From the IMG/VR virus record IMGVR_UViG_3300012988_000001, positions 62,001 through 126,000 of that record: 64,000 nt of DNA; one strand, 5' to 3'. A program made the translations under genes and the position numbers. A model generated the notes under the pieces. The model was not told the DNA's origin. It worked only from the letters and a program-made list of their open reading frames with translations, and did no database searches. This document shows positions 7,871 through 62,297 of the stretch, piece after piece. Each line of letters opens with the position of its first letter. Position 1 is the stretch's first letter.

Positions 7871-7920
7871 TTCACACATCGCAGAAAACTGTGGTAAAAA
7901 ATATTGCATTCAAAAATGTT

Positions 7921-7948
7921 GGGACAAACGAAAAAAATGTGATATAAT
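7921..7948 (+). promoter_or_regulatory. GGGACA-class promoter (copy 1)
   Basis: TTGGGACAAAC...TGTGA-TATAAT, 16-nt spacer. Confidence 0.8.
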
Positions 7949-7957
7949 AATGATGTA

Positions 7958-7975
7958 GACAGCGATGTAGCTGTC
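7958..7975 (+). promoter_or_regulatory. GAUGUA-loop leader hairpin (copy 1)
   Basis: GACAGC-GATGTA-GCTGTC upstream of NadM-Nudix. Confidence 0.65.
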
Positions 7976-8006
7976 GGTAATGAAATAACTAAGGAGTACT
8001 TAGAAA

Positions 8007-9116
8007 ATGAAAGAAAAAGTCTATGTTTATATTGGTCGCTTCCAAATGGCACACGTTGGTCATGAAGCAGTAATTACACACGCAGCATCTAAAGCAGACC
8101 GTCTAGTTCTACTAGTAGGTTCCGCAGATCTTGCACGTGATCCAAAAAACCCGTTCACTTTTGAAGAACGCAAATCCGTGCTAGAAGCAATGGCACAACG
8201 TATTGTTACTGAGCAATGGTCACAAGGCCGTTCAGTGAAGGTTGATATTCTACCAGTTCACGACTATACGTATAACAATACTAAGTGGTTAAAAGAAGTA
8301 CAAAACCAAGTACGTTCAGTTACTAACAGTACTGATATTACTTTGGCAGGTTGCCGTAAAGATGGCGATACCAGTACTTTCTACCTTGACTTCTTCCCGC
8401 AGTGGAAACAAGATTTTATCAATGAAGTATCAGAAGTATCACTAACCAAAGTTAGTCGTTCTAGCGGTGAAAAAACCGATTTGGGTTCTGTTGCCATCAG
8501 CAGCACTAAACTTCGTAATCAATACTTCAGTACTAAACAGGTTCCATCAGATCTCCCACAAGAAACTGCTGAGTTCCTAGAAAAGTTCAAAGTTCGTTCT
8601 CCTGAGATTCTTGACAATCTCGTGAATGAGCATAACTTCGTAGTACGTTACAAAGAACAAATGAACACACAGCTTCCTTACAACAACATTCCATTCCTAA
8701 CGGGTGATGCTCTAGTTGTATGTGCTGGTCACGTTCTACTTGTGAAGCGTCGTACTTATCCGGGTAAAGGTCTATGGGCGTTACCGGGCGGTTTCTTCGA
8801 TGCATGGGTTGATCAAACTCAAGTTGATACGGCTCTACGTGAACTAAAAGAAGAAACTAAGATTCAAGTACCTTACAAAACTCTAAAAGGTTCTATTGTG
8901 AAGGTCGATGAATTCGGTGATTTCGAGCGTTCTCTACGCTGGCGTCTAATCACCAAGTGTGCTTACATCAAACTTGATGGTTCCACACTACCAAATGTAA
9001 AAGGCAGTGATGACGCAGAGAAAGCGTTCTGGGTTCCTCTATCTGAGATTACCAAGAATCGCCACATGTTCTTTGAAGATCACTACTCAATCATTGACAC
9101 TATGATTGGTTTATAA
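8007..9116 (+). CDS. nadM: bifunctional NMN adenylyltransferase / ADP-ribose pyrophosphatase (NadM-Nudix)
   Basis: YIGRFQMAHVGH (HxGH), NPFTFEER, SSTKLR; Nudix box GGFFD...TALRELKEET; GSDDAEKAFW; FFEDH. Confidence 0.95.
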   Translation: MKEKVYVYIGRFQMAHVGHEAVITHAASKADRLVLLVGSADLARDPKNPFTFEERKSVLEAMAQRIVTEQWSQGRSVKVDILPVHDYTYNNTKWLKEVQNQVRSVTNSTDITLAGCRKDGDTSTFYLDFFPQWKQDFINEVSEVSLTKVSRSSGEKTDLGSVAISSTKLRNQYFSTKQVPSDLPQETAEFLEKFKVRSPEILDNLVNEHNFVVRYKEQMNTQLPYNNIPFLTGDALVVCAGHVLLVKRRTYPGKGLWALPGGFFDAWVDQTQVDTALRELKEETKIQVPYKTLKGSIVKVDEFGDFERSLRWRLITKCAYIKLDGSTLPNVKGSDDAEKAFWVPLSEITKNRHMFFEDHYSIIDTMIGL

Positions 9117-9117
9117 T

Positions 9118-9663
9118 ATGCTATACTGTCTCTCACGTGATATATTTGACGATTTGATGGCAGTAAAGCATCATGAACATAGCAAGTACGATGGAACAAA
9201 TGCTTGTCATTTCGTACTTGACAATCAAGCAAAAGAGTGTAAACTAGTCAGTACTTTACCGATGATCTTAGCTGCTGCAAGGCAGTTAAGGGATAAGAGG
9301 GAATGGCAAAATGCATCTCTTATAGCACGAATGTGGGTATCAACAGTGTACCCATTCTCATCCGAGGTTATTGACTTGGACTTTAAACACCAAGACATTG
9401 ACGAAGGATACTGGGAGTACTGGTATGCTAGTTTAGGAGCTAAGAAGCTCTTTATTAGTAAAGGATACTTCTCAAACGCAATTAAAGTTAACGGTGGAGT
9501 TCCCCGCTACTGTATAGACGATGGGCTATCAGTTAAGGAATATACGTTATCTGAGATTGAACAAAGTAATCAGTATTTTAAACTGAGTGCTGTCTTCCCA
9601 GCAGAACCACGAATGTTCGCAGACGACAACGCGGAATATATGATTCCTTACAACATAATCTGA
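9118..9663 (+). CDS. hypothetical protein within the NAD operon
   Basis: ORF between the two NAD genes. Confidence 0.7.
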   Translation: MLYCLSRDIFDDLMAVKHHEHSKYDGTNACHFVLDNQAKECKLVSTLPMILAAARQLRDKREWQNASLIARMWVSTVYPFSSEVIDLDFKHQDIDEGYWEYWYASLGAKKLFISKGYFSNAIKVNGGVPRYCIDDGLSVKEYTLSEIEQSNQYFKLSAVFPAEPRMFADDNAEYMIPYNII

Positions 9664-9681
9664 AAGGCGATGTAGCTTTTC
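9662..9681 (+). promoter_or_regulatory. GAUGUA-loop leader hairpin (copy 2)
   Basis: GAAAGGC-GATGTA-GCTTTTC upstream of Nampt. Confidence 0.65.
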
Positions 9682-9710
9682 TTAACACTTTATCCGAAGA
9701 GGAAACAACC

Positions 9711-11189
9711 ATGAAAAATCTAAACGTAAACTTCATTCTAAACGTAGACAGCTACAAAACCGCTCACGGTATGATGATGAAAGAAGGTGTAGTTGCACTT
9801 GAATCAAACATCATTGCTCGTAAGCCTACTCCTTATGCTACACACGTAGTCATGATGGGTATCCAAATCTACCTACAAGAATATCTTGATATTACCATTA
9901 CAACTGCTGATATCGATGAAGCTGAAGAAGAAACCGCATCTCGCGGGGATTATTTCGACCGCCCATTCTGGGAACATATCGTAGAAGTACACAAAGGTCG
10001 TGTCCCTCTACATATCCGTGCTATTCCTGAAGGTACTGTTGTACCAGTAGGTATGCCACTAGTACGCTCTATGAGTACTGATCCAGCAGTATTAGTAATT
10101 GCTAGCTACATTGAAACTCAACTTCAACGTGCTATTCAGTTCCCAACAACTGTTGCTTCTAACGCTCGCAGCATCAAGTCCTTCTTGGCTGATACAATGG
10201 AACGTCACAGTGGTCAACGCTTCGTTGATTACCATCTACACAACTTTGGTGATCGCAGTGCATCTTGCTACGAAGCAGCATGGCTAGCAGGTGTTTCACA
10301 TGCTGTAGTGTTCAGTGGTTCTGATTGCCTAATGGCAAACCGTTACATTAAACACTACTATCACACTAAGAAAAACTATCTAAGCAGTGTGATGGCAACC
10401 GAGCATAGTGCTACCTGTTCTAACTCCGACGCAGACAAACGCGACGACTTCAATATGGCCCTAAAAATGGTTCGTATTTGGGAGAAAATGTGTGATGATT
10501 ATATTGCAAAAGGTTCCGTTGGTATTCCACCAATTGTATCAATTGTAATCGATACATATGATGCATATCGCTTTGTTCGTGAGTTTATCGGTACTCGTCT
10601 AAAAGCAACTATCCAAGAGATCGCTGCTAAATGTCCGGGTGCTAAACTTGTAATGCGTCCAGACAGTGGTGACCCAACAACTATGCCTATTGAAATCCTA
10701 GAGATTCTAGCAGACAAGTTCGGTACTACTCTAAATGCTAAAGGTATGCGTGTTCTACCATCTTACATTGGCGTAATCCAAGGTGATGGTATCGAAGAAG
10801 ACTCTATCCGTGCAATCGTTGCAAACCTTGACAAACACAATCTATCCCTAGAGAACATCGTGTTTGGTATGGGCGGTAAGCTAGTACATCCACCTAAAGG
10901 TCGCGATACATACTCATTCGCCATGAAAGGTTCTGCACAACAACTATCAGAAGGTACTTGGGAAGACCTATTCAAAGACCCAATCACTGACGTTGGTAAA
11001 CGTAGCCTACGTGGTCGTGTAACTACTTACAAGTGCAAACAAAGTGGTAAAATCATGGCTGAACGTGTAGAGCTAGCAGCAGTAAATCCATTCCTAGAAG
11101 ACATGATGGTTGATGTTTATAAGGATGGCGTAATTATGAACCTAAGCACTTTCGATGAAGTTCGCGAACGTGCAAACAAAGGTCTATAA
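9711..11189 (+). CDS. nadV: nicotinamide phosphoribosyltransferase (Nampt/NadV)
   Basis: DSYK, HNFGDRS, ATEHS, VIDTYD, MRPDSGDP, IQGDG, FGMGG, KDPITDVGKRS. Confidence 0.95.
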   Translation: MKNLNVNFILNVDSYKTAHGMMMKEGVVALESNIIARKPTPYATHVVMMGIQIYLQEYLDITITTADIDEAEEETASRGDYFDRPFWEHIVEVHKGRVPLHIRAIPEGTVVPVGMPLVRSMSTDPAVLVIASYIETQLQRAIQFPTTVASNARSIKSFLADTMERHSGQRFVDYHLHNFGDRSASCYEAAWLAGVSHAVVFSGSDCLMANRYIKHYYHTKKNYLSSVMATEHSATCSNSDADKRDDFNMALKMVRIWEKMCDDYIAKGSVGIPPIVSIVIDTYDAYRFVREFIGTRLKATIQEIAAKCPGAKLVMRPDSGDPTTMPIEILEILADKFGTTLNAKGMRVLPSYIGVIQGDGIEEDSIRAIVANLDKHNLSLENIVFGMGGKLVHPPKGRDTYSFAMKGSAQQLSEGTWEDLFKDPITDVGKRSLRGRVTTYKCKQSGKIMAERVELAAVNPFLEDMMVDVYKDGVIMNLSTFDEVRERANKGL

Positions 11190-11196
11190 TCTTTTA

Positions 11197-11223
11197 GGGG
11201 AGTCTAGTACTCCCCATTTTCTT
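11197..11223 (+). terminator. intrinsic terminator of the NAD operon
   Basis: GGGGAGT-CTAGT-ACTCCCC-ATTTTCTT. Confidence 0.8.
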
Positions 11224-11234
11224 AAGAGGTTTAT

Positions 11235-12127: not shown

Positions 12128-12128
12128 A

Positions 12129-12329: not shown

Positions 12330-12386
12330 TTGATAGGAAGATTATGGGGATGTATAATCCCCTATTAATTAATCAGGAGATACCTT

Positions 12387-12629: not shown

Positions 12630-12638
12630 GGAACACAA

Positions 12639-18424: not shown

Positions 18425-18429
18425 ATGTT

Positions 18430-18458
18430 GGGACAAACCCGAAATAATGTGATATAAT
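18430..18458 (+). promoter_or_regulatory. GGGACA-class promoter (copy 2)
   Basis: TTGGGACAAAC-...-TGTGA-TATAAT, 17-nt spacer. Confidence 0.8.
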
Positions 18459-18470: not shown

Positions 18471-18881
18471 ATGACTAAGATTGAAGAGTTATATGTCGAG
18501 ATGACCAATCCAGATGCGATTAAAAAATTCGAATCAGATTATGGTATGTGTTTTTTACAGGAATCTGCAAGAATCGTATCTCATGGGTTGACATTCGGAT
18601 TGAATCACACTCTAATGTTTATACACAACTCATATGATGAAGATATGAGTGATGAAGAGTATTTAGACTTTACCGACGATTATGTATACTTTGATGATTT
18701 TGGTAAAGGAATTGAAGGATTACCATTTGATTGTACTGAAGAAGAATTCAATGCAGTTAAATTAAACAACTCTCATATCGTTTACAGTGATATGAAAGTA
18801 CTTGAAACAATGTACAAGAACTTTGAAAAGTATCTTGACATGGATGCAGTAAAACGTTATTCAAATAAGAGGAAATTATAA
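18471..18881 (+). CDS. hypothetical acidic protein
   Basis: 136-aa ORF directly after the promoter. Confidence 0.7.
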   Translation: MTKIEELYVEMTNPDAIKKFESDYGMCFLQESARIVSHGLTFGLNHTLMFIHNSYDEDMSDEEYLDFTDDYVYFDDFGKGIEGLPFDCTEEEFNAVKLNNSHIVYSDMKVLETMYKNFEKYLDMDAVKRYSNKRKL

Positions 18882-21932: not shown

Positions 21933-21966
21933 TTGACAGGGGAGTGTAGATTTGCTATACTCCCTT
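21933..21966 (+). promoter_or_regulatory. sigma70 promoter interlocked with a hairpin
   Basis: TTGACA-17-TATACT; GGGAGTGTAG/CTATACTCCC stem overlaps the spacer and -10. Confidence 0.75.
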
Positions 21967-29318: not shown

Positions 29319-29332
29319 TTGATCTAGGTCAA
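29319..29332. promoter_or_regulatory. FNR box upstream of nrdDG
   Basis: TTGAT-CTAG-GTCAA, 9/10 to TTGAT-N4-ATCAA, abutting the -35 element. Confidence 0.7.
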
Positions 29333-29361
29333 GGGACAAAACGGGTTTTGGGTGATATAAT
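29333..29361 (+). promoter_or_regulatory. GGGACA-class promoter (copy 3), nrdDG
   Basis: GGGACA-17-TATAAT with TG extension. Confidence 0.8.
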
Positions 29362-29408: not shown

Positions 29409-31217
29409 ATGAAAAAAGATAATTTATACAATGACGTAACTAGTTTTTTAAATCAAAGCAACCAAGATTTGCTAAATGAAAACGCCAATAAAGATGCAAA
29501 GATAGTCAACACACACCGAGATTTATTAGCTGGTATCCTTTCCAAACACTATGCTGAAGAAGTTATTGCAGAAGATTTAATGCAATGGCATAATGATGGA
29601 TATGGACATATTCATGATCTAGATTACTATATTAGTCCATTAACCAACTGCTGTTTAGTTAATTATGAAGATATGTTAGCTAACGGTTTTAAAATTGGTA
29701 ACGCACAAGTTGGTTCCCCAAATAGTATTGGCGTGGCAAGTACAATACTAACACAAATAGTACTAGCAGTTTCAGCATCACAATACGGTGGTCAATCCCT
29801 ACCACACATTGATCGTGGTTTGGAACCATATGTAGAGAAATCCTATCAAAAACTATTACAACAACAAAAAGAATTTAATCTTAGCGATGAGTATGTTGAG
29901 TATGCATTACGTAAAGAAGTTTATGATGCAATGCAAGCGTTGTTGTATCAAGTGAATACAATCACATCAAGTAATGGGCAAACACCATTCGTCACTATTA
30001 GCTTAGGATTGAGTACTTCTAAGTTCGGTAAAATGATTACTGAATCATACTTGGATGTTCATGAAAAAGGATTAGGAATAGACGGTGCTACACCCGTATT
30101 TCCTAAAGTTGTGTTCTTCCTTCAGGAAGGTATCAATATGAGTACTGAAGATTGTAACTACGATTTAAAACAAAAAGCACTACAATGTGCAGCTAAACGT
30201 ATATATCCCGACTTTGTTTCAGTTCCATTAAACTTGAAAGTAACCAAGAGTACTTCAGAAGCTGTTACTCCTATGGGTTGCCGATCCTTCCTATCCAACT
30301 GGGTTGATGAGAATGGTTCGGAACGTTACAACGGACGCTTTAACTTAGGAGTGGTGAGTATCAATCTTCCATTATTAGCCCTTGAATCGACCTCTGACGG
30401 AGATTTCTTTGCTAAGGTAGACCAGCATATGCAAATGGCATATCGTGCTCAGATGAACCGTGTAGAGCGTTTAAAGAGCATGAAAGCGAAGCAGAACCCT
30501 ATTCTTTTCACTGAAGGAGTTCTTGCACGTTTAGACCCAGAAGATACTATAGAACAGCTATTTTACGATGGGTATGCAAGTATTAGTATTGGATTTGTAG
30601 GTTTAGCAGAATGTTCAGAAATACTCAAAGGTAATGTTGATAAAACGTTCTGTAAGTCTATTCTATCATATATGAAATCTAAGTGTGAAGATTTCAGAGT
30701 GAAGAGTAGATTATCCTTTAGTTTATATGGAACACCAGCAGAGAGTCTTTGCTACAAGTTTGCACGTTCAATTGAGAAGAAATACCCTTCAGTACTAAAA
30801 CGTGATTATATCACTAACTCATTCCACCAGCCAGTATGGATTGAAAGTTCTCCACTAGAGAAATGGAATTATGAAGAAGGTTTTGCATTCTTGAGTAATG
30901 GTGGAAATATTAGTTATGTTGAGACACCAAACCTTAAAAATAATATAGCAGCCTTAGAAGCATTGGTCAATTATGCATATGAACGTGTACCGTACTTTGG
31001 TATTAACCAACCAGTAGATAAATGTTATGAATGTAATTTCGAAGGTGAGTTTGCTGTAGATCGTGATGGTTTCCATTGCCCTAACTGCAATAATAGAAAT
31101 GATAAATCAATGTCGGTTATCCGTAGAGTATCTGGTTATCTTGGAAACCCAACTTCCAGAGGATTTAACAAGGGCAAACAACAAGAATGTGTTGAAAGGA
31201 CAAAACATACAAAATGA
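29409..31217 (+). CDS. nrdD: anaerobic (class III) ribonucleotide reductase, no N-terminal ATP cone
   Basis: HIHDLDY, TNCCL, GQTPF, FPKVVF, TPMGCRS, NLGVVSINL, YGTPAESL, CYEC/CPNC, RRVSGYL glycyl-radical motif. Confidence 0.97.
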   Translation: MKKDNLYNDVTSFLNQSNQDLLNENANKDAKIVNTHRDLLAGILSKHYAEEVIAEDLMQWHNDGYGHIHDLDYYISPLTNCCLVNYEDMLANGFKIGNAQVGSPNSIGVASTILTQIVLAVSASQYGGQSLPHIDRGLEPYVEKSYQKLLQQQKEFNLSDEYVEYALRKEVYDAMQALLYQVNTITSSNGQTPFVTISLGLSTSKFGKMITESYLDVHEKGLGIDGATPVFPKVVFFLQEGINMSTEDCNYDLKQKALQCAAKRIYPDFVSVPLNLKVTKSTSEAVTPMGCRSFLSNWVDENGSERYNGRFNLGVVSINLPLLALESTSDGDFFAKVDQHMQMAYRAQMNRVERLKSMKAKQNPILFTEGVLARLDPEDTIEQLFYDGYASISIGFVGLAECSEILKGNVDKTFCKSILSYMKSKCEDFRVKSRLSFSLYGTPAESLCYKFARSIEKKYPSVLKRDYITNSFHQPVWIESSPLEKWNYEEGFAFLSNGGNISYVETPNLKNNIAALEALVNYAYERVPYFGINQPVDKCYECNFEGEFAVDRDGFHCPNCNNRNDKSMSVIRRVSGYLGNPTSRGFNKGKQQECVERTKHTK

Positions 31218-31684
31218 ATTACCAAACAATAATTAAAGATGATTTAGTTAACGGGGAGGGCATACGTTGCTCTCTTTTTGTTTCTGGTTGTAGTCACGGT
31301 TGCGTTGGATGTTTCAATGAAAGTGCATGGGACTATAGATCAGGTTCAGAATATACCAAAGAAACTGAACAAATAATTCTAAATGAATTAAACAAGAAGT
31401 ACGTAAGTGGATTAACTTTATTAGGTGGAGATCCACTAATGAAGAAAAATATAGATGTAGTACTTAACCTTTGTAGAACAGTTAAAGAAAAATATCCAGA
31501 TAAGAATATTTGGTGTTGGACCGGATACACATTAGACGAAGTTCAATCAAATCATGCGAAAGACATATTGAAATACGTTGATGTATTAGTGGATGGGAAA
31601 TTTGAAGAGTCCCAAAAAGATTTAACATTACCGCATCGTGGTTCCCGAAACCAGAGAGTACTCAAACGTGGAATAGACTACTAA
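31214..31684 (+). CDS. nrdG: anaerobic RNR activating enzyme
   Basis: NGEGIRCSLFVSGCSHGCVGC (CxxxCxxC), LGGDPL, VLVDGKF, RGSRNQR. Confidence 0.97.
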   Translation: MNYQTIIKDDLVNGEGIRCSLFVSGCSHGCVGCFNESAWDYRSGSEYTKETEQIILNELNKKYVSGLTLLGGDPLMKKNIDVVLNLCRTVKEKYPDKNIWCWTGYTLDEVQSNHAKDILKYVDVLVDGKFEESQKDLTLPHRGSRNQRVLKRGIDY

Positions 31685-37792: not shown

Positions 37793-37823
37793 TGAGGTTG
37801 TCTATTGACAGCCTCATTTTTTT
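37793..37823 (+). terminator. intrinsic terminator of the tail operon
   Basis: TGAGGTTGTC-TATT-GACAGCCTCA-TTTTTTT. Confidence 0.88.
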
Positions 37824-37833
37824 CGTCTATAAT
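37805..37833 (+). promoter_or_regulatory. sigma70 promoter embedded in the terminator
   Basis: TTGACA-17-TATAAT. Confidence 0.85.
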
Positions 37834-44145: not shown

Positions 44146-44790
44146 ATGCTGGGTTATAAAGTAAAGACTGCGTTACCATTAGATGTTATGAAAACTCTTA
44201 AAACTTCTGGTCCTATGACCAGTGCTGAAATTGACGGTGTTAAGTTTAACTATTTCCCAGAAAAAGTTGCTACTTTTTTAAAGAATACTAAATGCATTTG
44301 TTGTGGTATTGAAGCACACGAAGTACGTTTGGAGGAAGGTAAAGGTACTCATGCTATCTTTGGTATGATGCACCTGAACGTATACGCAAGGGCTGAAACA
44401 ACATGGGGTGAGTACTGGGAACTTATGACAGTTGACCATAACATTCTCAAATCACTAGGTGGGCCAGATGTTGAATCAAACTTCAACACCATGTGCCGTA
44501 AGTGTAACCAGCTTCGTGGTTCTCGTTACCCGAATCTTGAAGACTTCCTAGCTCGTTACAAAGAGCATGGTCAGTCCTTGATCACAAGTCGTGCAACGTC
44601 CCTACACCATTACCGTTTGCGTAAGCGTGAAGAGGGTTCAGAAGAGTATCAGGCAATCGTGAAGCATCGCAATGAGATGCGTGAAGCCAAGGTTGCAGAT
44701 TATCTCAGCGGCCTATGTGCGAGCCATGTAGGGGCTTATAACCGTCATAACAAGGCGTTGAAAAAAGCCTTGACAGCCGAAACAAAATAA
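44146..44790 (+). CDS. HNH endonuclease
   Basis: CICCG ... TVDHNILKSLGG...NFNTMCRKCNQLRG. Confidence 0.85.
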   Translation: MLGYKVKTALPLDVMKTLKTSGPMTSAEIDGVKFNYFPEKVATFLKNTKCICCGIEAHEVRLEEGKGTHAIFGMMHLNVYARAETTWGEYWELMTVDHNILKSLGGPDVESNFNTMCRKCNQLRGSRYPNLEDFLARYKEHGQSLITSRATSLHHYRLRKREEGSEEYQAIVKHRNEMREAKVADYLSGLCASHVGAYNRHNKALKKALTAETK

Positions 44791-44798
44791 CCTACACT
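44770..44798 (+). promoter_or_regulatory. sigma70 promoter in the 3' end of the HNH gene
   Basis: TTGACA-17-TACACT. Confidence 0.7.
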
Positions 44799-44800
44799 GA

Positions 44801-44827
44801 AGGAGTCCAACTTGGACTCCTTTTTTT
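44801..44827 (+). terminator. intrinsic terminator
   Basis: AGGAGTCCAA-C-TTGGACTCCTTTTTTT. Confidence 0.88.
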
Positions 44828-44840
44828 ATTGGAAAAAAAC

Positions 44841-45221
44841 ATGAAATGGCTTAGAAAAATATTTGGAGAAAAGAACGTGAGTACTAAATGGTTTTCACAA
44901 GATATAATGAAGCAATTGGCTTATAGTTATGGTACAGTTACTGATTACGGTGAGTGGAATGAAAAGACAGAAGAGTTTGCCCCGGATACCGTTCTAGAAG
45001 TGATTCACAATGAGCAATGCGATTCGACCCGATGGAATAGCGTTCACGATCTAGTTTTTGTTGACAAGTCTACTGGTGTGACGTATCATACACGGTATGA
45101 ACAGGGTCTTACCGAATCACAAATGCTCGAACCTTTTTATTATGATAAAGAGGGTGTTGAATGTGATATTGTTGAGACATGGGAAGAACAAATTACAGTA
45201 CTTAGGTGGAAACAGAAATAA
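44841..45221 (+). CDS. hypothetical protein
   Basis: ATG 44841. Confidence 0.7.
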   Translation: MKWLRKIFGEKNVSTKWFSQDIMKQLAYSYGTVTDYGEWNEKTEEFAPDTVLEVIHNEQCDSTRWNSVHDLVFVDKSTGVTYHTRYEQGLTESQMLEPFYYDKEGVECDIVETWEEQITVLRWKQK

Positions 45222-45610: not shown

Positions 45611-45614
45611 ACTT

Positions 45615-45643
45615 GGGACAAACGGGTTTTTTTGTGATATAAT
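45615..45643 (+). promoter_or_regulatory. GGGACA-class promoter (copy 4) driving the ncRNA
   Basis: TTGGGACAAACGGG...TGTGA-TATAAT, 17-nt spacer. Confidence 0.82.
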
Positions 45644-45649
45644 ATAGTT

Positions 45650-46135
45650 GAGGAATATCCTCAGTGTATAACCAATCCTGAATGACATGCGAAAGCGTGA
45701 GATTTTGAACCTGATCCTATCGAAAAGTAGATGGCAGTTGAGTAGTTCATTCAGTACGATGTGCAAAAGAAACCCGTCAGAAATAAAGCGTAAGTGTTTG
45801 TCAAATCCAACGAGACAGTAAATCACACGCATCACGGCAATGCGGCACAATAAATGCAGTCATCAGACTTGAACTGCACTAGATAGACATATGAGGCATA
45901 CTCACCCAGTCAAAGGGAGTCTCTTTACGGAGAGACAACAGTATTTGTTGCTGAATTAGCGAGTACTGTATGCGTGTGAGGAACACGACCGTTGTATGCG
46001 ACTGTAGTAGATGGAAACCGGACAACCCGCCATCGTTACTTTTATTTCAAATGGATACCTGTATCCAAAATTTGAGTAAATCTACAAATTCAGATTGGTT
46101 ATACTACCAGTGTCAGGTTTATCCTGATTTTTTTT
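45650..46135 (+). ncRNA. putative large structured non-coding RNA (~480 nt), family unassigned
   Basis: No plausible ORF; own promoter and terminator; 17-bp helix 45666-45683/46088-46104; GAAA and UACG tetraloop hairpins; 10-bp helix 45823-45832/45970-45979; many further stems. Confidence 0.8.
46113..46135 (+). terminator. intrinsic terminator of the ncRNA
   Basis: TCAGG-TTTAT-CCTGA-T8. Confidence 0.7.
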
Positions 46136-50737: not shown

Positions 50738-50962
50738 ATGACTGATATTATTACAAAAATTGCACGTGATGTTGCAAACACTGTTTGGACAGGTGTACAA
50801 GACGTGTTTAGTAGTGCTGGTGGTGCGTTAGTTGCCATCGTCGTTGCTATCATTCTTAGTATCTTCCCAGTGTGGATTCTTTGTGTCGCTGCTGTAGCAC
50901 TTTTTGTTGGAATTCTTTACACCCAATACAAAGAAACGCTTGACACCGAATCCGAAGAATGA
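50738..50962 (+). CDS. small membrane protein
   Basis: Long hydrophobic core, RBS AGGAG. Confidence 0.7.
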   Translation: MTDIITKIARDVANTVWTGVQDVFSSAGGALVAIVVAIILSIFPVWILCVAAVALFVGILYTQYKETLDTESEE

Positions 50963-50968
50963 GATAAT
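50940..50968 (+). promoter_or_regulatory. sigma70 promoter abutting a terminator
   Basis: TTGACA-17-GATAAT with TG extension. Confidence 0.65.
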
Positions 50969-50998
50969 AAGCCCCTACGTAACACTAGGGGCTTTTTT
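50969..50998 (+). terminator. intrinsic terminator
   Basis: AAGCCCCTA...TAGGGGCTTTTTT. Confidence 0.88.
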
Positions 50999-51012
50999 AT
51001 TGGAGAAAAATC

Positions 51013-51453
51013 ATGCTTACTATTATGAACATTATTTCGTTAGCAATATTCTTGGTTCCGGCAGCATATTACGATTGGTTGGGTGAAACTATCCAATATA
51101 AGCTAGTAAACTTTGGTGAAGTGAATGATCAGTATGATCGTGAACTACTACTTGCAATTGCATTAGTACAGGCAGGTAAAGGTCAAGCTGAATTTAGTAC
51201 TGAAGGATTTATTCGTATTAGTACCGAAGATTCTAGTTTTACCATCTATGCACAAGATTACCGTAATGAAATGTTTGGTGTATGTTATCGTTATCAGAAA
51301 AATAACTACAGTCAACGTCGTGAAGGTATTCTATCGTTGAATACTCGTAAGTACTTACGTGAGTTCAAGGAACAACATTTGGGTATTCGTGATCCAAGTA
51401 GTATCCAAAAATCATTATTCAATTTCAAGAAAGAAAAGGTAACAATTCAATGA
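51013..51453 (+). CDS. hypothetical protein with N-terminal membrane anchor
   Basis: RBS GGAG. Confidence 0.7.
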   Translation: MLTIMNIISLAIFLVPAAYYDWLGETIQYKLVNFGEVNDQYDRELLLAIALVQAGKGQAEFSTEGFIRISTEDSSFTIYAQDYRNEMFGVCYRYQKNNYSQRREGILSLNTRKYLREFKEQHLGIRDPSSIQKSLFNFKKEKVTIQ

Positions 51454-55460: not shown

Positions 55461-55499
55461 GCAGTTTGTTTCAAAAACTTGGGACAAACTGCTTTTTTT
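55461..55499 (+). terminator. intrinsic terminator containing the -35 of the next promoter
   Basis: GCAGTTTGTTTCAA-AAAC-TTGGGACAAACTGC-TTTTTTT. Confidence 0.8.
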
Positions 55500-55509
55500 G
55501 TGCTATAAT
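55481..55509 (+). promoter_or_regulatory. GGGACA-class promoter (copy 5)
   Basis: GGGACA-17-TATAAT, TGTGC before the -10. Confidence 0.8.
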
Positions 55510-55571: not shown

Positions 55572-57106
55572 ATATGTCATTCAAACAAGCAGTTATCAAC
55601 GAAACCACCGCAGCAACCGACAACGTAGCTTTCACGGCTAACGGTGCAGTCTCAAACGCAAGCTCCCTCAACTTCCTAGTTGATCTATTTGCGATTCTAG
55701 GTGCAGTTCGTGGTAAAGATTTCTCTACCTTTGAGAATCTATTCGAACAAGCATATTCCATGAACCGTAAGCTAACGCTTCAAATGGTTCTATGGGTACG
55801 TGATGTTCGCGGTGGTGCAGGTGAGCGTGAAACCACACGTCAAATCCTTCGTCACCTAGAAGCAAACCATCAACAGGATCTAGTAGAACTAATCCCAGTA
55901 CTCGCAGAGTATGGTCGTTGGGATGATCTTCTAATTTTCACTAACGATAATGTGAAGAACTTTGCTTATGCAACTATTTCTGCTAATCTAAAAGCTGGTA
56001 ACGCACTATGTGCTAAATGGATGCCTCGCGTCTATAAGCTCAAAAAAGGTGCTGATGGTACAGTGAACAAAGAATCGGTTGCAAACCAGAACCGTATTGC
56101 GAACAATCAAATTGCTCGTGAGCTAATGCAAGTGATGGGTCTAAACGAACGTCAGTACCGCAAACTACTAGCTTCTCTAAGCACTACGGTTGAACAAAAC
56201 ATGTGTGCTAAAGATTGGTCTAGTATTGAGTACTCTCATGTTCCATCTGTAGCAATGAACCGCTACCGTGCTGCTTTCATGCGTAACGACGAAACTCGTT
56301 TCACTGAATTCGGTAACAAGGTAGAAGCTGGTGAAGTTAAGGTTAATGCTTCGGCACTATTCCCTTACGATGTAACCACTAAGTTCAAGTACGGTCAATC
56401 CGACAAGGTTTTTGTTGGTCAGTGGGATGCTCTACCAGACTACTTAAACGGTGCTTCAATCCTACCAATGTGTGATACCAGTGGTTCGATGGAATGTCCA
56501 GCAGGTGCATCAGGCTCCCTAACTTGTATGGATGTAGCGGTTTCTCTAAGCCTCTATATTTCTGACAAGCAGAAAGGTGCGTTCAAGGACGTGTTCTTGA
56601 ACTTCAGCGAGTCTCCCAACTTGTTCGTACTTAAGGGTAAGAACATCGAAGAGAAGTATCGCGACCTCTGCAAGTACAAGGGTGGTGCGTACTGGGGTGG
56701 TTCTACTGATATCGGTAAGGCTTTCCACCACATCCTAAAAACTGCTGTGAAGCAGAACGTGCAACAACAGGATATGCCTGAATATCTACTAATCTTTAGC
56801 GATATGGAGTTCGACTCTACATATGCTTGGGGTGGTGTAGAGAACAACGGTAACTGGGATGTAACTGCTTATGAGTATGCTAAACAGCTATACGCTCAGA
56901 ACGGTTATGAACTACCTAAAGTTATCTTCTGGAACCTAAATGGTCGTCCGGGTAACAACCCTGTCACGATCCACGATACTGGCACTGCTATGGTATCTGG
57001 TTTCAGTCCAGCAATCCTAACTGCAATCCTAGCTGGTGAGCAAGTAGATCCTGTATCTATCATGCTAGCAGCAATTGATAAGCCTCGCTATCAAGTGATT
57101 GCATAA
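55572..57106 (+). CDS. Ro60/TROVE-like HEAT-repeat plus vWA protein (DUF2828 type)
   Basis: RDVRGGAGER, YGRWDDLL, CAKWMPR, IEYSHVPSVAM, MIDAS CDTSGSM, IFSDMEFD, FWNL; ATG 55572 behind GAGGT. Confidence 0.82.
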
Positions 57107-57294: not shown

Positions 57295-57297
57295 GAG

Positions 57298-58297: not shown

Positions 58298-58396
58298 CTC
58301 TTAGAGTTAAAGTAGAAAGTCCAACGAGGCTTTGTGCAAACACGGCCTCACTGTAGTCCCGTTTGTCAAGGTTTCCAAAACAAAAAGGAGAAATCA

Positions 58397-59317: not shown

Positions 59318-59327
59318 GGAGTTGTGT

Positions 59328-59648
59328 ATGATTACTATTCAAGGTATCAATGTAGAAGTAACCGATGCTATTAAAGAGCACATTGAACATAATGTAGGTA
59401 AACTTTCTAAGTACAACACTAAAAACGATCTCAACATCAAAGTAAATTTGAAGGTTGAAACTAAAGATACTTTTGACGTAGATGTTATTGTTGAAGGTAA
59501 AAACATTTCTGGTGGTGCTGTTAGTGATGACATGTACACTGCTATTACCATGTCATTTGAAAATGTGGAAACTATTCTAGCTCGTCGTAAGGGCAAAGAA
59601 CTTTCCAAACGTCATGAAAAAATTCAGTTGACAGACGCAGAAGAATAA
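59328..59648 (+). CDS. hpf: ribosome hibernation promoting factor (HPF/RaiA family)
   Basis: ITIQGINVEVTDAIKEHI...KL.KY...SDDMYTAI......L.RRKGK. Confidence 0.85.
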   Translation: MITIQGINVEVTDAIKEHIEHNVGKLSKYNTKNDLNIKVNLKVETKDTFDVDVIVEGKNISGGAVSDDMYTAITMSFENVETILARRKGKELSKRHEKIQLTDAEE

Positions 59649-59657
59649 TGATATACT
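59628..59657 (+). promoter_or_regulatory. sigma70 promoter abutting a terminator
   Basis: TTGACA-18-TATACT with TG extension. Confidence 0.65.
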
Positions 59658-59685
59658 AAGGACATTCCACGGAGTGTCCTTTTTT
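59658..59685 (+). terminator. intrinsic terminator
   Basis: AAGGACATTCC-AC-GGAGTGTCCTTTTTT. Confidence 0.85.
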
Positions 59686-59699
59686 ATTTGGAGGGGAAC

Positions 59700-60107
59700 A
59701 TGGCAGTAGAAAGAATTAGAAAATTATTTGCAATTGACGAAATACCAGTAATTAATGGTTGGATATTAATTGCAGAACGTGAACAATATCGCGTTGATAC
59801 AAAAAGTCGTAATATCTATCATGAATTGTACTATTCTGATGCCGATATACTTAACATTCGTTATAGTGATACTGGTATTACTATTACTTCGTATAATTTT
59901 CGTGAAAATCTTACAACCATGAAGTTTGAATGGAAACTGCACGAAATGATGGACGAGGCAGAATATTTCCAGCTTTGTACGGTTGACGACACCTTTGGTA
60001 TAGAGTATACTGATTACCTTGAAATGTTAAAACAGTACTCCAGAATCATGACATGGGTACGAGAAAACATGGTTTCGAAAGAACCACCACGCCCATTCAT
60101 ATTCTAA
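59700..60107 (+). CDS. hypothetical protein, FFQxSTV family
   Basis: EAEYFQLCTVDD. Confidence 0.7.
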   Translation: MAVERIRKLFAIDEIPVINGWILIAEREQYRVDTKSRNIYHELYYSDADILNIRYSDTGITITSYNFRENLTTMKFEWKLHEMMDEAEYFQLCTVDDTFGIEYTDYLEMLKQYSRIMTWVRENMVSKEPPRPFIF

Positions 60108-60116
60108 GGAGAACGA

Positions 60117-60521
60117 ATGATCGACGAATTAGTTAAAGTACTGGATAATGTGACCAATAATGGGTTGGCAACACTCATCAGTGCAGAATCTGAGTGGTTA
60201 AAACTTTCTGAAATGACTGAACTCAACTACAATACAAATTCATGCCGTTTGGTAGCTAATATCATTACATCTGACGATCATGCAAATGCAGTGACATTAT
60301 GCCTTTACAAAGATATGTTTCGTATGGTCCGTTACACTGGCATCGATCCAGCTAATAATACATGTAAAGATTTGAAGAATACTAAAATTCGAATAGACAT
60401 TGGTTCTGAGGAAGAATTCTTTCAAGAATCAACAGTTGAAGATTTTAACGGATTAGTGTATGATGAATATCATGTAATACAACAAATCATAAGTGTAATG
60501 ACAAAATATCTATGGAGCTAA
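60117..60521 (+). CDS. hypothetical protein, FFQxSTV family
   Basis: EEEFFQESTVED. Confidence 0.7.
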   Translation: MIDELVKVLDNVTNNGLATLISAESEWLKLSEMTELNYNTNSCRLVANIITSDDHANAVTLCLYKDMFRMVRYTGIDPANNTCKDLKNTKIRIDIGSEEEFFQESTVEDFNGLVYDEYHVIQQIISVMTKYLWS

Positions 60522-60522
60522 T

Positions 60523-60699
60523 ATGATAGCAGTCTTAGAAGAAGATTGGGGTGTGAGTGACAGTGATTGCTACCCTCCACGTGACAAATACGGCTGGCGT
60601 GATTATGGTGTAGATAATGACGAAGCGGAAGAACAAGCAAAACTAGATCAAGAGAACAAAGAGAAACGCTCTTGGTGGGAAAAATTCTGGGGGTCATAA
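60523..60699 (+). CDS. 58-aa acidic protein ending WWEKFWGS (below the ORF-track cutoff)
   Basis: ATG 60523 behind GGAG; stop coupled to the next start. Confidence 0.7.
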   Translation: MIAVLEEDWGVSDSDCYPPRDKYGWRDYGVDNDEAEEQAKLDQENKEKRSWWEKFWGS

Positions 60700-60926
60700 T
60701 GGCATCTTTCGATTCAGCTATGGAAATGATGAAAGAAGTAGAAAAAATGCGGAGTGAGTTGGGTGTTGCACCACATTCATTGGCAGATGACGTTGTGACC
60801 ACTTTTTGTAAAGAAAAACGTGAACAAAGTAATGAAGTCACCGTAAGAGAAATTGTAAATGCTTACGTGAATGAACAAAAAACCCGTCCAACTAATCCCG
60901 CATGGGATAAATTCTGGGAGTCATAA
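60699..60926 (+). CDS. small protein ending AWDKFWES
   Basis: Coupled TAATG start. Confidence 0.7.
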   Translation: MASFDSAMEMMKEVEKMRSELGVAPHSLADDVVTTFCKEKREQSNEVTVREIVNAYVNEQKTRPTNPAWDKFWES

Positions 60927-60930
60927 AAAA

Positions 60931-61107
60931 ATGTCTATATCATTTGATGAATTACTTGACCTCATGGATGATGTTGAAGAATTAAACAATGAGGGTCGTT
61001 TACCGACCCATTTGGAAACACACGATTCAGTTGCTGAATTGTTTATTAAGCATTATGGATCAAAGAAATTAGACCGTTCCGAATGGAACTATTTTTGGGA
61101 GAACTAA
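60931..61107 (+). CDS. small acidic protein ending EWNYFWEN
   Basis: ATG 60931 behind GGGAG. Confidence 0.7.
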   Translation: MSISFDELLDLMDDVEELNNEGRLPTHLETHDSVAELFIKHYGSKKLDRSEWNYFWEN

Positions 61108-61108
61108 G

Positions 61109-62233
61109 ATGAAAAAATATATCGTCGGTGGTTTTGTACGTGATAAACTACTTGGCCTAAAACCAAAAGACAAAGACTACGTACTTGTAGGAGCCAAACA
61201 GCGTGATATTGATTATCTAACGTCCCAAGGCTACAAACAAGTAGGTGCTGACTTCCCTGTATACTTATCTCCAGCAGGTGATGAGTATGCTCTTGCACGT
61301 GTTGAGCGTAAGACGGGTAACGGATATAAAGGTTTTACTGTAGATACCGAAGGTGTAACTCTTGAACAAGATCTATTCCGTCGAGATCTCACTATCAACG
61401 CCATTGCCTACGATCCAGTATTCCAAAAACATATCGACCCATATGGTGGTAAGTCCGATCTACAGAATAAAGTACTACGTCATGTTAGTCCTCACTTTGC
61501 TGAAGACCCACTACGTATCCTACGTCTAGCTCGCTTTGCTGCTCGTTATAGCGATTTCACTATTCATAGCAGTACTGAAGAACTAGTACTCAACATGGTA
61601 AAAGAAGGTATGATTGACCATCTTACCCCGGAACGTGTATATGTAGAATTCGAAAAAGCTCTATCCGAGAATAATCCAAGTATTTTCTTCAAGAACCTAC
61701 GTAAATGGGGTGCTCTAGAACGCCTCCTACCGGGTTTGGAAGCCTTTAATAAGGCAGATGGGGAAATGCTCGATAAAATCACACAGACCAGCACAGAGGC
61801 TTACACGAACGATTTTCAGTGGTCTTTCCTACTATCCATGAGTCGTGGTGTAGTATCTAAAGATTATGCTATTGGTCAATTGAAACTACCTGCACAAGCA
61901 GTGAAGTTCTTCAAGTTTGTTACTGCTAACTTTGAAGAGATCAAGCTATTCAGGAAGAAAACACCTGAACAGATGGTTGAAATGCTAACTAAACTAAATA
62001 TCCACAACAACGGTGGTGAGGAATTCTTGTACAAAGTACTTGAGTACTTCAACATTCAGCGTGATACGGATGGTGAGCTAGAAGACCTAATTGTGAAAGT
62101 GTACGATAAATTTGAAGGCACTGTGATTGGTGATATTGACCAGATGTTGAAAGACGGAACTTTAGAGCCTAAAGAAATCCGTGCATATGTGTCGAATCTT
62201 CGCACAACTGAAGTTGCGAAAATGTTCTCATAA
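61109..62233 (+). CDS. cca: class II tRNA nucleotidyltransferase (CCA-adding), no HD domain
   Basis: YIVGGFVRD.LLG...KDKDY, EYALAR.E.K, DLFRRDLTINA, F.EDPLRILR.ARF, LTPERV..E. Confidence 0.93.
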   Translation: MKKYIVGGFVRDKLLGLKPKDKDYVLVGAKQRDIDYLTSQGYKQVGADFPVYLSPAGDEYALARVERKTGNGYKGFTVDTEGVTLEQDLFRRDLTINAIAYDPVFQKHIDPYGGKSDLQNKVLRHVSPHFAEDPLRILRLARFAARYSDFTIHSSTEELVLNMVKEGMIDHLTPERVYVEFEKALSENNPSIFFKNLRKWGALERLLPGLEAFNKADGEMLDKITQTSTEAYTNDFQWSFLLSMSRGVVSKDYAIGQLKLPAQAVKFFKFVTANFEEIKLFRKKTPEQMVEMLTKLNIHNNGGEEFLYKVLEYFNIQRDTDGELEDLIVKVYDKFEGTVIGDIDQMLKDGTLEPKEIRAYVSNLRTTEVAKMFS

Positions 62234-62237
62234 ATTT

Positions 62238-62266
62238 GGGACAAAAAAGTAAAAATGTGATATACT
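62238..62266 (+). promoter_or_regulatory. GGGACA-class promoter (copy 6)
   Basis: TTGGGACAAA-...-TGTGA-TATACT, 17-nt spacer. Confidence 0.78.
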
Positions 62267-62297
62267 ATAGGTATCTGATGATTATTGAGATGAAATT

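What the first reader, a model, noticed from the sequence alone, without database searches (positions are those of the whole stretch)
7915..62270. Six-copy promoter class with GGGACA in place of TTGACA and an extended -10
Seen: (TT)GGGACAAA...GTG(A/C)TATA(A/C)T at 7921, 18430, 29333, 45615, 55481 and 62238, with 16-17 nt spacers, always intergenic and pointing into an operon (NAD salvage, nrdDG, the ncRNA, Ro-like protein, Nudix/glutaredoxin). Canonical TTGACA promoters occur separately at 7841, 21933, 37805, 44770, 50940 and 59628. A reverse copy of GACAAACGGG sits at 58358-58367 before the lysozyme. Inference: a distinct temporal class read by sigma70 with a phage co-activator (analogous to T4 MotA/AsiA middle promoters) or by a phage sigma factor.
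Basis: partly seen in the sequence, partly recalled or inferred. Interest (0 to 1): 0.6.

Follow-up and report, generated by a model that had tools for sequence, protein, structure and literature searches.

The report
Phage sigma-factor middle promoter class
A 366-kb jumbo phage carries 35 near-identical promoters (six in this window) whose odd -35 box TGGGACA is most likely read by the phage's own sigma factor rather than the host's; they sit in front of DNA-metabolism genes, tRNAs, small RNAs and the late sigma factor. Related phages were already known to have such promoters, but the link to the sigma factor is newly supported here.

Summary
All six sites exist as described. They belong to a genome-wide set of 35 sites with consensus cTTGGGACAAA-N9-TGTG(A/C)TATAATA. 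All 35 lie on the gene strand, none on the other strand, and none appear in shuffles. GGGACA sits 17 bp (32 of 35 sites) or 16 bp from TATAAT, which is the -35 position.

The window is part of a RaK2/121Q-like jumbo phage whose nearest relatives are Salmonella phage Munch and Klebsiella phage fENko-Kae01. The genome has no MotA or AsiA homologue. It does encode a 322-aa sigma-70-family factor behind a TTGACC/TATTAT promoter.

Across seven related genomes the same promoters sit before the same orthologous genes, but the -35 box differs by lineage:
- GGGACA in this phage, Munch and 121Q
- GGGAT(A/G) in Hallingskeid
- G(A/G)AAC(G/A) in GAP32 and Yen9-04
- TGAACA in RaK2

These changes track substitutions at the phage sigma residues that align with sigma-70 R584, E585, R588 and Q589. 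The TTGACA promoters do not vary between lineages.

The class precedes nrdDG, NAD salvage, ssb, primase, topoisomerase, four tRNAs, five paralogous structured ncRNAs and the gp55-like late sigma. This fits a middle step in a sigma cascade. Timing and sigma dependence were not measured.

Phages CBB and GAP32 were already reported to have 'divergent RpoD-like' promoters, so this is a new member of a known kind.

The parts
7920..7948 (+). Class-B promoter 1: TGGGACA box, 16-bp spacer, TGTGA-TATAAT. It sits 80 bp downstream of a TTGACA promoter in the same divergent intergenic region and points into the NAD-salvage genes (8007-9116, 9711-11189).
   Evidence: (46.3 bits); the same promoter stands before the orthologue in Munch, Hallingskeid, GAP32 and Yen9-04, each with its lineage's box
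18429..18458 (+). Class-B promoter 2, 17-bp spacer, before a 136-aa ORF of unknown function (18471-18881).
   Evidence: (44.1 bits); an orthologous promoter is present in Hallingskeid
29332..29361 (+). Class-B promoter 3 (aGGGACA, GGTGA-TATAAT), before nrdD (29409-31217) and nrdG (31214-31684). It is the weakest of the six.
   Evidence: (25.4 bits); conserved in Munch
45614..45643 (+). Class-B promoter 4, driving an ORF-free structured RNA.
   Evidence: 43.6 bits; an orthologous promoter lies at the same distance in Munch, GAP32 and Hallingskeid
45710..45919 (+). Core of a structured ncRNA. It is one of five paralogues in the genome, and each paralogue sits behind a class-B promoter.
   Evidence: 24 of 40 predicted pairs show compensatory changes in 29 copies; no Rfam match; blastn finds it only in RaK2-like jumbo phages
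55480..55509 (+). Class-B promoter 5 (TGTGC-TATAAT), before the DUF2828/DUF7788 protein. The likely start is the ATG at 55574; the frame ends at 57106.
   Evidence: (41.9 bits); orthologous promoters in Munch, GAP32 and Yen9-04
62237..62266 (+). Class-B promoter 6 (-10 is TATACT), before the Nudix gene (62298-62741).
   Evidence: (39.2 bits); orthologous promoters in Munch and 121Q
7841..7870 (+). Host-type (class A) promoter: TTGACA, 18-bp spacer, TATAAT. It lies in tandem upstream of class-B promoter 1.
21933..21961 (+). Class A promoter: TTGACA, 17-bp spacer, TATACT.
37805..37833 (+). Class A promoter: TTGACA, 17-bp spacer, TATAAT.
44770..44798 (+). Class A promoter: TTGACA, 17-bp spacer, TACACT. 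A hairpin, a T-run and a ribosome-binding site follow directly.
50940..50968 (+). Class A promoter: TTGACA, 17-bp spacer, GATAAT. A hairpin, a T-run and a ribosome-binding site follow directly.
59628..59657 (+). Class A promoter: TTGACA, 18-bp spacer, TATACT. A hairpin, a T-run and a ribosome-binding site follow directly.

Best explanation
The GGGACA sites are promoters read by host core RNA polymerase carrying the phage's own sigma-70-family factor. That factor is a 322-aa protein encoded outside the window, at genome 325777-326745.

Proposed sequence of events:
1. Host sigma-70 first reads the TTGACA-type promoters. One of them (TTGACC, 17-bp spacer, TATTAT) precedes the phage sigma gene.
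2. The new sigma binds core polymerase. Its region 2/3 reads TGTG(A/C)TATAAT. Its divergent C-terminal helix-turn-helix reads TGGGACA at -35, through R296, T297, H300 and R301, which are the equivalents of sigma-70 R584, E585, R588 and Q589.
3. This turns on about 35 transcription units: nucleotide and DNA metabolism, NAD salvage, tRNAs, five structured ncRNAs and the gp55-like late sigma gene.
4. The late sigma then serves (A/G)TAAATA late promoters.

Shown here: the motif, its statistics, position and gene context; the presence and relatives of the sigma gene; and the co-variation across lineages. Inferred: that this sigma binds the box, the residue-to-base assignments, and the timing.
For: 1. 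Motif. There are 35 sites on the gene strand, none on the other strand and none in shuffles. The spacer is 17 bp at 32 sites and 16 bp at 3, which is sigma-type -35/-10 geometry.

2. Sigma gene. Pfam finds Sigma70_r2 (E 7e-14) and r3 (E 3e-9). NCBIfam RpoD/RpoS models align over residues 56-280. The closest solved structures are SigA, RpoD and RpoS. A host-type promoter lies upstream of the gene.

3. Lineage-specific box. The top hexamer at the -35 position of TATAAT is GGGACA in this phage and Munch, GGGACA in 121Q, TGGGAT in Hallingskeid, TGAAAC in GAP32, TG(A/G)AAC in Yen9-04, BF and XbC2, and TGAACA in RaK2. TTGACA is a top hexamer in all of them.

4. Orthology-anchored comparison. Sites were chosen only for TGnTATAAT at the same distance from orthologous start codons. 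This gives the same lineage consensus in 8-30 promoters per genome. Promoter-specific oddities are kept across lineages while the lineage shift is laid over them: GGGATG, GGAATG and TGAATG before one gene, GAGACA before topoisomerase II.

5. Sigma recognition helix. At the four positions the residues are R-T-H-R (this phage, Munch), R-S-H-R (121Q), H-S-H-R (Hallingskeid, C-31 to T), K-A-S-R (GAP32, XbC2, Yen9-04, BF, CBB; GG to AA or GA) and R-G-H-Y (RaK2; G-35 to T, G-33 to A). The variable residues follow an i, i+1, i+4, i+5 pattern, one face of a helix.

6. Agreement with sigma-70 genetics. In sigma-70, R584 reads -31 and E585/R588 read -33 (PMC2613000). The box changes fall on those positions.

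7. Independence. The sigma tree puts the three box changes on three separate branches. 121Q and RaK2 are sisters (99/100) but differ in both box and helix.

8. Structure model. AlphaFold with a 12-sequence alignment gives helix 275-280, a short hairpin, then helix 296-316, with block-mean pLDDT about 68-84 across residues 241-320.

9. Gene content is that of a middle class and includes the late sigma gene (phrog_12791, E 5.5e-148).

10. Precedent. CBB and GAP32 have 'divergent RpoD-like' promoters before DNA-synthesis genes and before the gp55-like gene (PMC5259590).
Against: - There is no transcript, start-site or binding data for this phage or any relative. No infection RNA-seq was found, and the raw RNA runs held no reads of the stretch.
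- Pfam does not detect region 4. Profile alignment to RpoD stops at the first helix of the helix-turn-helix because of an 8-10-residue insertion in the turn. The residue equivalences therefore rest on helix register, hydrophobic pattern and a medium-confidence model.
- Only about five lineages and three co-changes are available, so chance or another co-evolving factor is not excluded.
- RaK2 keeps H at the 588 position although its box has A at -33.
- GGGACA keeps 4 of 6 sigma-70 consensus bases, and 27 of 35 sites have TGnTATAAT. Host sigma-70 could probably fire many of them unaided.
- Eight sites carry TGTCC instead of TGTG(A/C), which this model does not explain.
Confidence: 0.7

Rival explanations
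1. Sigma appropriation. Host sigma-70 stays on the polymerase and reads the -10 element. An unrecognised phage activator, functionally like T4 MotA with AsiA, binds the GGGACAAA box and replaces the region 4 contact.
For: The box lacks the TT of TTGACA while the -10 is a perfect sigma-70 element. T4 is the precedent (established knowledge). Most genes of this phage have no assigned function, so an unknown factor could exist. GAP32, XbC2 and CBB carry an HTH regulator next to the sigma gene.
Against: MotA_activ, MotCF and AsiA give no match at E<=10. The box sits at -35 with 16-17 bp spacing, not centred at -30. The lineage changes in the box fall at -31 and -33/-34 and coincide with changes at the matching residues of the phage sigma. 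This model would have to treat that as coincidence, and it leaves the conserved phage sigma without a promoter class.
Confidence: 0.12
2. These are ordinary host sigma-70 promoters of the extended -10 type with a partial -35 (GACA). They are active from the start of infection. The conserved flanks reflect descent from a duplicated cassette or a secondary role such as shut-off.
For: GGGACA matches 4 of 6 bases of TTGACA, 27 of 35 sites have TGnTATAAT, and an A-rich stretch lies upstream. Promoter 1 stands in tandem with a TTGACA promoter.
Against: The relatives' recorded hosts are mostly Enterobacterales, whose sigma-70 region 4.2 I take to be conserved (established knowledge, not tested here). 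Yet the box differs by phage lineage, and in GAP32-type phages it matches sigma-70 consensus at only 2-3 of 6 positions, while TTGACA promoters in the same genomes do not drift. Positions that sigma-70 does not read are near-invariant: GG at -35/-34 and AAA at -29 to -27. The spacers between sites are unrelated in sequence, so recent duplication is excluded.
Confidence: 0.1
3. The box is one half of an operator for a dimeric phage regulator that binds the inverted repeat GGACA(AAA)...(TTT)TGTCC between -35 and -10.
For: Eight of 35 sites carry TGTCC, giving 5-8-bp inverted arms with the box. Their Munch counterparts have TGTGA, so the change arose repeatedly in this lineage.
Against: The other 27 sites lack the second arm. 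The arm centres are 17 bp apart and so not on one face of the helix. Every other lineage has the class without the repeat.
Confidence: 0.05

Closest known systems
'Divergent RpoD-like' promoters of Pectobacterium phage CBB and Cronobacter phage GAP32 (Buttimer et al. 2017, PMC5259590; Abbasifar et al. 2014 as cited there)
   Same: Same phage clade, with sigma proteins 42-45% identical. The architecture is the same: a sigma-70-like -10 with a non-TTGACA -35. The positions are the same, before DNA-synthesis genes and the gp55-like sigma gene. Each coexists with TTGACA early promoters and ATAAATA late motifs.
   Different: The -35 box is TGAAACG there and TGGGACA here. Those papers did not assign the class to the phage sigma. 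The box/sigma co-variation and the ncRNA targets are shown here.
Phage-encoded sigma cascades: Bacillus phage SPO1 gp28 (middle) and gp33/34 (late); T4 gp55 (late). From established knowledge.
   Same: A phage sigma made from host-read early promoters redirects host core polymerase to a phage-specific promoter class. That class includes the gene for the next sigma.
   Different: This sigma keeps regions 2, 3 and a region-4-like domain, and a near-consensus sigma-70 -10. Only the -35 specificity is changed. SPO1 gp28 promoters differ at both elements. No sequence relation to gp28 was tested.
T4 MotA/AsiA-dependent middle promoters (sigma appropriation)
   Same: Middle-class gene content, a sigma-70-type -10, and a phage-specific upstream box replacing the -35.
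   Different: No MotA or AsiA homologue. The box sequence is different. The box lies at -35 with 17-bp spacing rather than centred at -30.
Sigma-70 extended -10 (TGnTATAAT) promoters
   Same: 27 of 35 sites carry TG at -15/-14 and a perfect or near-perfect -10.
   Different: Such promoters do not need or conserve a -35. Here the -35 box is the most conserved part and is specific to the phage lineage.

Membership tests
Phage-sigma-dependent promoter class of RaK2-like jumbo phages ('divergent RpoD-like' promoters of CBB and GAP32) | Sigma-70-like -10 (TATAAT, mostly with TG upstream) plus a conserved non-TTGACA box at -35 with 16-18 bp spacing, in many copies on the gene strand | tested here: met
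   35 sites, all on the + strand; spacer 17 bp at 32 sites and 16 bp at 3; none in shuffles
Phage-sigma-dependent promoter class of RaK2-like jumbo phages ('divergent RpoD-like' promoters of CBB and GAP32) | Located before DNA/nucleotide-metabolism genes and the gp55-like late sigma gene, at positions shared with relatives | tested here: met
   Downstream genes include nrdDG, NAD salvage, ssb, primase, topoisomerase II, exonucleases and the late sigma. Orthologous promoters are found in 6 relatives.
Phage-sigma-dependent promoter class of RaK2-like jumbo phages ('divergent RpoD-like' promoters of CBB and GAP32) | The genome encodes the clade's sigma-70-family factor | tested here: met
   P0001, 322 aa, with Pfam r2 and r3. 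It is 84% identical to the Munch and fENko-Kae01 sigma, 42-45% to GAP32 and CBB, 37% to 121Q and 31% to RaK2.
Phage-sigma-dependent promoter class of RaK2-like jumbo phages ('divergent RpoD-like' promoters of CBB and GAP32) | The phage sigma, not sigma-70, directs initiation at these sites | not testable with these tools
   Only indirect support: box and recognition helix change together on three branches. No transcript or binding data.
T4-type MotA/AsiA middle promoters | MotA activator (MotA_activ and MotCF domains) encoded by the phage | tested here: not met
   No match at E<=10 in six-frame searches of the whole genome
T4-type MotA/AsiA middle promoters | AsiA anti-sigma/co-activator encoded by the phage | tested here: not met
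   No match at E<=10
T4-type MotA/AsiA middle promoters | MotA box (TGCTTtA core) centred at about -30, 11-13 bp from the -10 | tested here: not met
   The box is TGGGACA(AA) at -36 to -27, and its hexamer lies 16-17 bp from TATAAT
Sigma-70 family, groups 1-3 (for the phage sigma itself) | Region 2 and region 3 domains | tested here: met
   Pfam PF04542 at 51.9 bits and PF04539 at 37.4 bits, both over their cut-offs. hhalign to RpoD residues 375-578 gives probability 99.2%.
Sigma-70 family, groups 1-3 (for the phage sigma itself) | Region 4.2 helix-turn-helix that reads the -35 element | tested here: inconclusive
   Pfam r4 is not detected. Profile alignment ends in the first HTH helix. The AlphaFold model shows helix 275-280, a hairpin insertion, then helix 296-316 at block-mean pLDDT 68-84 across residues 241-320.
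Sigma-70 family, groups 1-3 (for the phage sigma itself) | Group 1/2 signature YATWWIRQ in region 2.3 | tested here: not met
   The sequence reads YASTAIRQ, so both tryptophans are absent. It is therefore not a primary-type sigma.

The most novel reading that the evidence does not exclude
RaK2-like jumbo phages hold a natural series of matched sigma/-35 pairs (GGGACA, GGGATA, GAAACG, TGAACA). In each, one to three substitutions on one face of the recognition helix re-aim an otherwise sigma-70-like factor. That factor's regulon includes a previously undescribed family of five paralogous structured RNAs per genome as well as the late sigma. This would give ready-made orthogonal sigma/promoter sets and a direct test of the region 4.2 recognition code.
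Probability: 0.5. Interest if true: 0.6.

Novelty: new member of a known kind. Interest (0 to 1): 0.45.

Why it matters
It assigns a reader, and a place in a three-step cascade (host sigma, then phage sigma, then gp55-like sigma), to a promoter class so far only listed in genome papers of RaK2-like jumbo phages. These phages are being considered for therapy against Klebsiella, Salmonella and E. coli.

The differences between lineages amount to a natural specificity-swap experiment for the -35/region 4.2 contact. They suggest simple mutants to test, for example R296H tested with the GGGACA and GGGATA boxes.

The motif also gives annotators a way to find operon starts and unannotated RNA genes in these poorly annotated 350-kb genomes.

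Tried and rejected
- Transcript evidence. The run search found DNA holders and doubtful metagenomic 'RNA' contigs only. Laying reads gave zero reads from the two raw RNA runs. Contigs cannot show starts.
- Aligning region 4.2 to RpoD by profile comparison. The alignment stops before the recognition helix, both for the whole protein and for the C-terminal domain alone.
- Single-sequence AlphaFold gave mean pLDDT 37.5 and was unusable. The 12-sequence model is only medium quality, with mean pLDDT 63.5. Foldseek confirms a sigma fold but gives no residue equivalences.
- Pfam region 4 search of the genome found nothing.
- MotA and AsiA searches found nothing.
- Literature searches for the motif (GGGACAAA or GGGACA with phage terms) found nothing relevant in the open-access library. 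The fENko-Kae01 paper does not discuss promoters. The sigma in its virion proteome is the 281-aa late sigma, not this one.
- Rfam search for the ncRNA gave no family.
- My first weight matrix used the wrong spacer, was built from 3 seeds, and was discarded.
- A crude 'intergenic' count based on longest ORFs under-counted intergenic sites. It was replaced by a read-through-frame test.
- The reverse 10-mer at 58358 was rejected as part of the class.

Full report
**1. What the window is**

The window is bases 62001-126000 of a single 366,160-bp virus record with direct terminal repeats and 38.2% G+C. Its nrdD region is 80% identical to Klebsiella phage fENko-Kae01 and Salmonella phages Munch and 7t3, and 72-75% identical to the 121Q and Yen9-04 groups. 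It is therefore a new species-level member of the RaK2/121Q-like jumbo myoviruses. The best DNA holder among public runs is a soil metagenome. The host is not known. The closest relatives infect Salmonella and Klebsiella.

**2. Check of the observation**

Each is followed by (T)GTG(A/C) and TATAAT or TATACT.

The 8-mer alone is only mildly enriched: 6 copies against a shuffle mean of 1.95. The full two-block motif is not a chance event. A weight matrix built from the box and the -10 block, allowing spacers of 16-18 bp, finds 35 distinct sites of at least 20 bits on the + strand of the genome. It finds none on the - strand and none in block-shuffled genomes.

The consensus is aaaacTTGGGACAAA, about nine free bases, then (a/t)TGTG(A/C)TATAATA. 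GGGACA lies 17 bp from TATAAT at 32 sites and 16 bp at 3, so it occupies the -35 hexamer position. Variants are GAGACA (3), GGGATG (2) and GGGACG (1).

For 31 of the 35 sites no reading frame is open for at least 120 nt on both sides, against 64% of random positions that do have one. A start codon with a Shine-Dalgarno sequence, a tRNA or an ORF-free RNA follows.

'Ro-like' is a DUF2828/DUF7788 protein with no TROVE hit. The six TTGACA promoters are present as listed.

Two details needed correction:
- Eight of the 35 sites have TGTCC instead of TGTG(A/C), so they lack the TG of an extended -10.
- The reverse 10-mer at 58358 has no promoter context.

**3. Promoter classes in the genome**

Counting hexamers 16-18 bp upstream of every TATAAT gives three recurrent -35 words on the gene strand:
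- GGGACA, 28 times
- TTGACA, 24 times
- CTTGCA, 18 times

The third word belongs to a long, very conserved element: AAAAAGTACTTGCA, a spacer, then (A)CTGTATAATGTTT. Twenty copies were found, 17 of them in the first 20 kb. It is shared with Munch, 121Q, GAP32 and Hallingskeid, and is probably the strongest immediate-early promoter.

Genes on the - strand include structural blocks. They have no class-B promoter and often carry (A/G)TAAATA upstream: 21 of 42 against 45 of 378 + strand genes. This is like the T4-type late motif reported for CBB.

**4. The candidate reader**

The genome has no MotA or AsiA domain. It has one sigma-70-family gene (P0001, 322 aa):
- Pfam regions 2 and 3 are both over their cut-offs.
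- RpoD and RpoS models align through region 4.1.
- The best solved relatives are SigA, RpoD and RpoS.
- Region 4 is too divergent for Pfam.
- The gene lies behind TTGACC, 17 bp, TATTAT.

Homologues occur in every RaK2-like phage examined, at 84% down to 31% identity.

**5. The comparative test**

I fetched six relatives whole: Munch, 121Q, RaK2, GAP32, Yen9-04 and Hallingskeid. I pattern-searched two more, XbC2 and BF.

Each has TTGACA promoters and a second class with TGnTATAAT and a lineage-specific box:

| Phage | Box | Copies |
|---|---|---|
| Munch | TGGGACA | 26 |
| 121Q | GGGACA | 12 |
| Hallingskeid | TTTTTGGGAT(A/G) | 18 (plus 5 TGAGAT and 4 TGGGAC) |
| GAP32, XbC2 | TG(A/G)AACG | 28-33 |
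| Yen9-04, BF | TG(A/G)AAC(A/G) | 35 in BF |
| RaK2 | TTGAACAAAA | about 8-17 |

These copies lie on the gene strand, and reversed-pattern controls give 0 or 1.

To avoid choosing sites by their box, I took the first gene after each of this phage's class-B promoters and found its orthologue by tblastn. I then kept any TGnTATAAT at a similar distance from the orthologous start. The same lineage consensus came out, from 8-30 promoters per genome.

Individual promoters keep their own quirks while shifting with the lineage. One gene has GGGATG here and in Munch, GGGATA in 121Q and Hallingskeid, GGAATG in GAP32 and Yen9-04, and TGAATG in RaK2.

**6. Co-variation with the sigma**

In the last helix of the phage sigmas the first seven residues vary only at positions i, i+1, i+4 and i+5. 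By helix register and hydrophobic pattern these correspond to sigma-70 R584, E585, R588 and Q589.

| Phages | Residues at 584 / 585 / 588 / 589 | Box change relative to GGGACA |
|---|---|---|
| This phage, Munch | R T H R | none |
| 121Q | R S H R | none |
| Hallingskeid | H S H R | C to T at the fifth box position |
| GAP32, XbC2, Yen9-04, BF, CBB | K A S R | GG to AA or GA at the second and third positions |
| RaK2 | R G H Y | first position G to T, third position G to A |

In sigma-70, R584 reads -31, the fifth hexamer position, and E585/R588 read -33, the third (PMC2613000). The changes in box and protein therefore fall on matching positions.

A maximum-likelihood tree of the sigmas places the three changes on separate branches, and 121Q and RaK2 are sisters.

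An AlphaFold model with 12 homologues gives a helix-turn-helix-like end: helix 275-280, a short beta hairpin, then helix 296-316, with block-mean pLDDT 68-84 across residues 241-320. Profile alignment could not bridge the hairpin insertion. The residue equivalences are therefore an inference, not a result.

**7. What the class controls**

Downstream of the 35 promoters are:
- NAD salvage, nrdDG, a Nudix protein and the DUF2828 protein, all in the window
- single-strand DNA-binding protein (two tandem promoters), primase, two exonucleases, topoisomerase II large subunit, a Lon-like protease and an ATPase
- the gp55-like late sigma (phrog_12791, E 5.5e-148)
- four tRNA genes
- five ORF-free RNAs (section 8)

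This is middle-class content and it places the late sigma under class-B control. That agrees with CBB, where the gp55-like gene follows a 'divergent RpoD-like' promoter.

**8. A by-product: a structured RNA family**

The 320-nt leader after window 45615 is one of five paralogous RNAs in the genome. Each lies 40-90 nt after a class-B promoter.

A profile of the five finds 5 copies in each of Munch, Hallingskeid, GAP32 and Yen9-04, 4 in 121Q and 3 weak ones in RaK2. A TGnTATAAT with the lineage's own box was found upstream of 26 of the 30 full-length copies; three of the other four carry the box with a TGTCC-type -10.

RNAalifold on 29 copies predicts 40 pairs, 24 of them with compensatory double changes, including long-range helices. 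Rfam has no match. By blastn the element is confined to 62 RaK2-like phage records and is mostly unannotated. Its function is unknown.

**9. Verdict**

The phage sigma alternative is favoured (about 0.7). The MotA/AsiA-like alternative is not supported.
- Timing and direct recognition remain untested.
- The kind was already reported for CBB and GAP32 with a different box. New here are the GGGACA version, the co-variation that ties the class to the phage sigma, and the ncRNA targets.

Noticed in passing
window 45644-45970 (core 45710-45919); genome 40920-41119, 187904-188091, 269320-269478, 332473-332633: A family of five paralogous structured ncRNAs (core of about 160-210 nt). Each lies behind a class-B promoter, and the family is conserved in 3-5 copies in every RaK2-like phage examined. 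24 of 40 predicted pairs show compensatory changes. There is no Rfam match. In public records the element is mostly unannotated or called a hypothetical protein.
   Followed up: partly
genome 1-20000 (17 copies) plus 3 elsewhere; none in the window: A third promoter-like class. It is a long conserved element: AAAAAGTACTTGCA, a spacer, (A)CTGTATAATGTTT, then a G-rich leader. It has 20 copies here and is shared with Munch, 121Q, GAP32 and Hallingskeid. It is probably the immediate-early promoter set at the genome end.
   Followed up: partly
window 44770-44850, 50940-51015, 59628-59690; also upstream of the sigma gene (L001:1180-1266): Several TTGACA promoters are followed within about 10 nt of the -10 by a G+C hairpin and a T-run, then the ribosome-binding site. 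The terminator of the upstream unit thus lies inside the 5' end of the next transcript. From memory this resembles the promoter-stem-loop cassettes of T4-type phages. Three class-B promoters (genome 40819, 201931, 332397) show the same layout.
   Followed up: no
genome 187835, 214742, 276748, 305406, 311751, 318655, 332397, 362376 (none in the window): Eight class-B promoters have TGTCC instead of TGTG(A/C) before TATAAT. This removes the TG of the extended -10 and creates a 5-8-bp inverted repeat with the GGGACA(AAA) box. In the cases checked, the Munch counterparts have TGTGA, so the GA-to-CC change recurred in this lineage. It is unexplained.
   Followed up: partly
genome 160174/160218, 187789/187835, 239521/239587, 362316/362376: These are divergent intergenic regions. 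Each holds a class-B promoter on the + strand back to back with a (A/G)TAAATA late-like motif serving the - strand gene.
   Followed up: no
window 7841-7948: A TTGACA promoter and a class-B promoter lie in tandem, 80 bp apart, before the NAD-salvage genes. This suggests expression in two phases.
   Followed up: no
window 58358-58367: The reverse copy of GACAAACGGG is present. On the - strand it reads TTGACAAACGGG with no -10 element at the right distance, and the weight matrix scores nothing there. I take it for chance.
   Followed up: yes
genome 325777-326745 (P0001): The phage sigma lacks the tryptophan pair of region 2.3 (YASTAIRQ instead of YATWWIRQ). It also has an 8-10-residue hairpin inserted in the turn of its C-terminal helix-turn-helix. 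Both features are conserved across the clade.
   Followed up: partly
No TROVE domain was detected, so a link to the ncRNA family is speculation.
   Followed up: no
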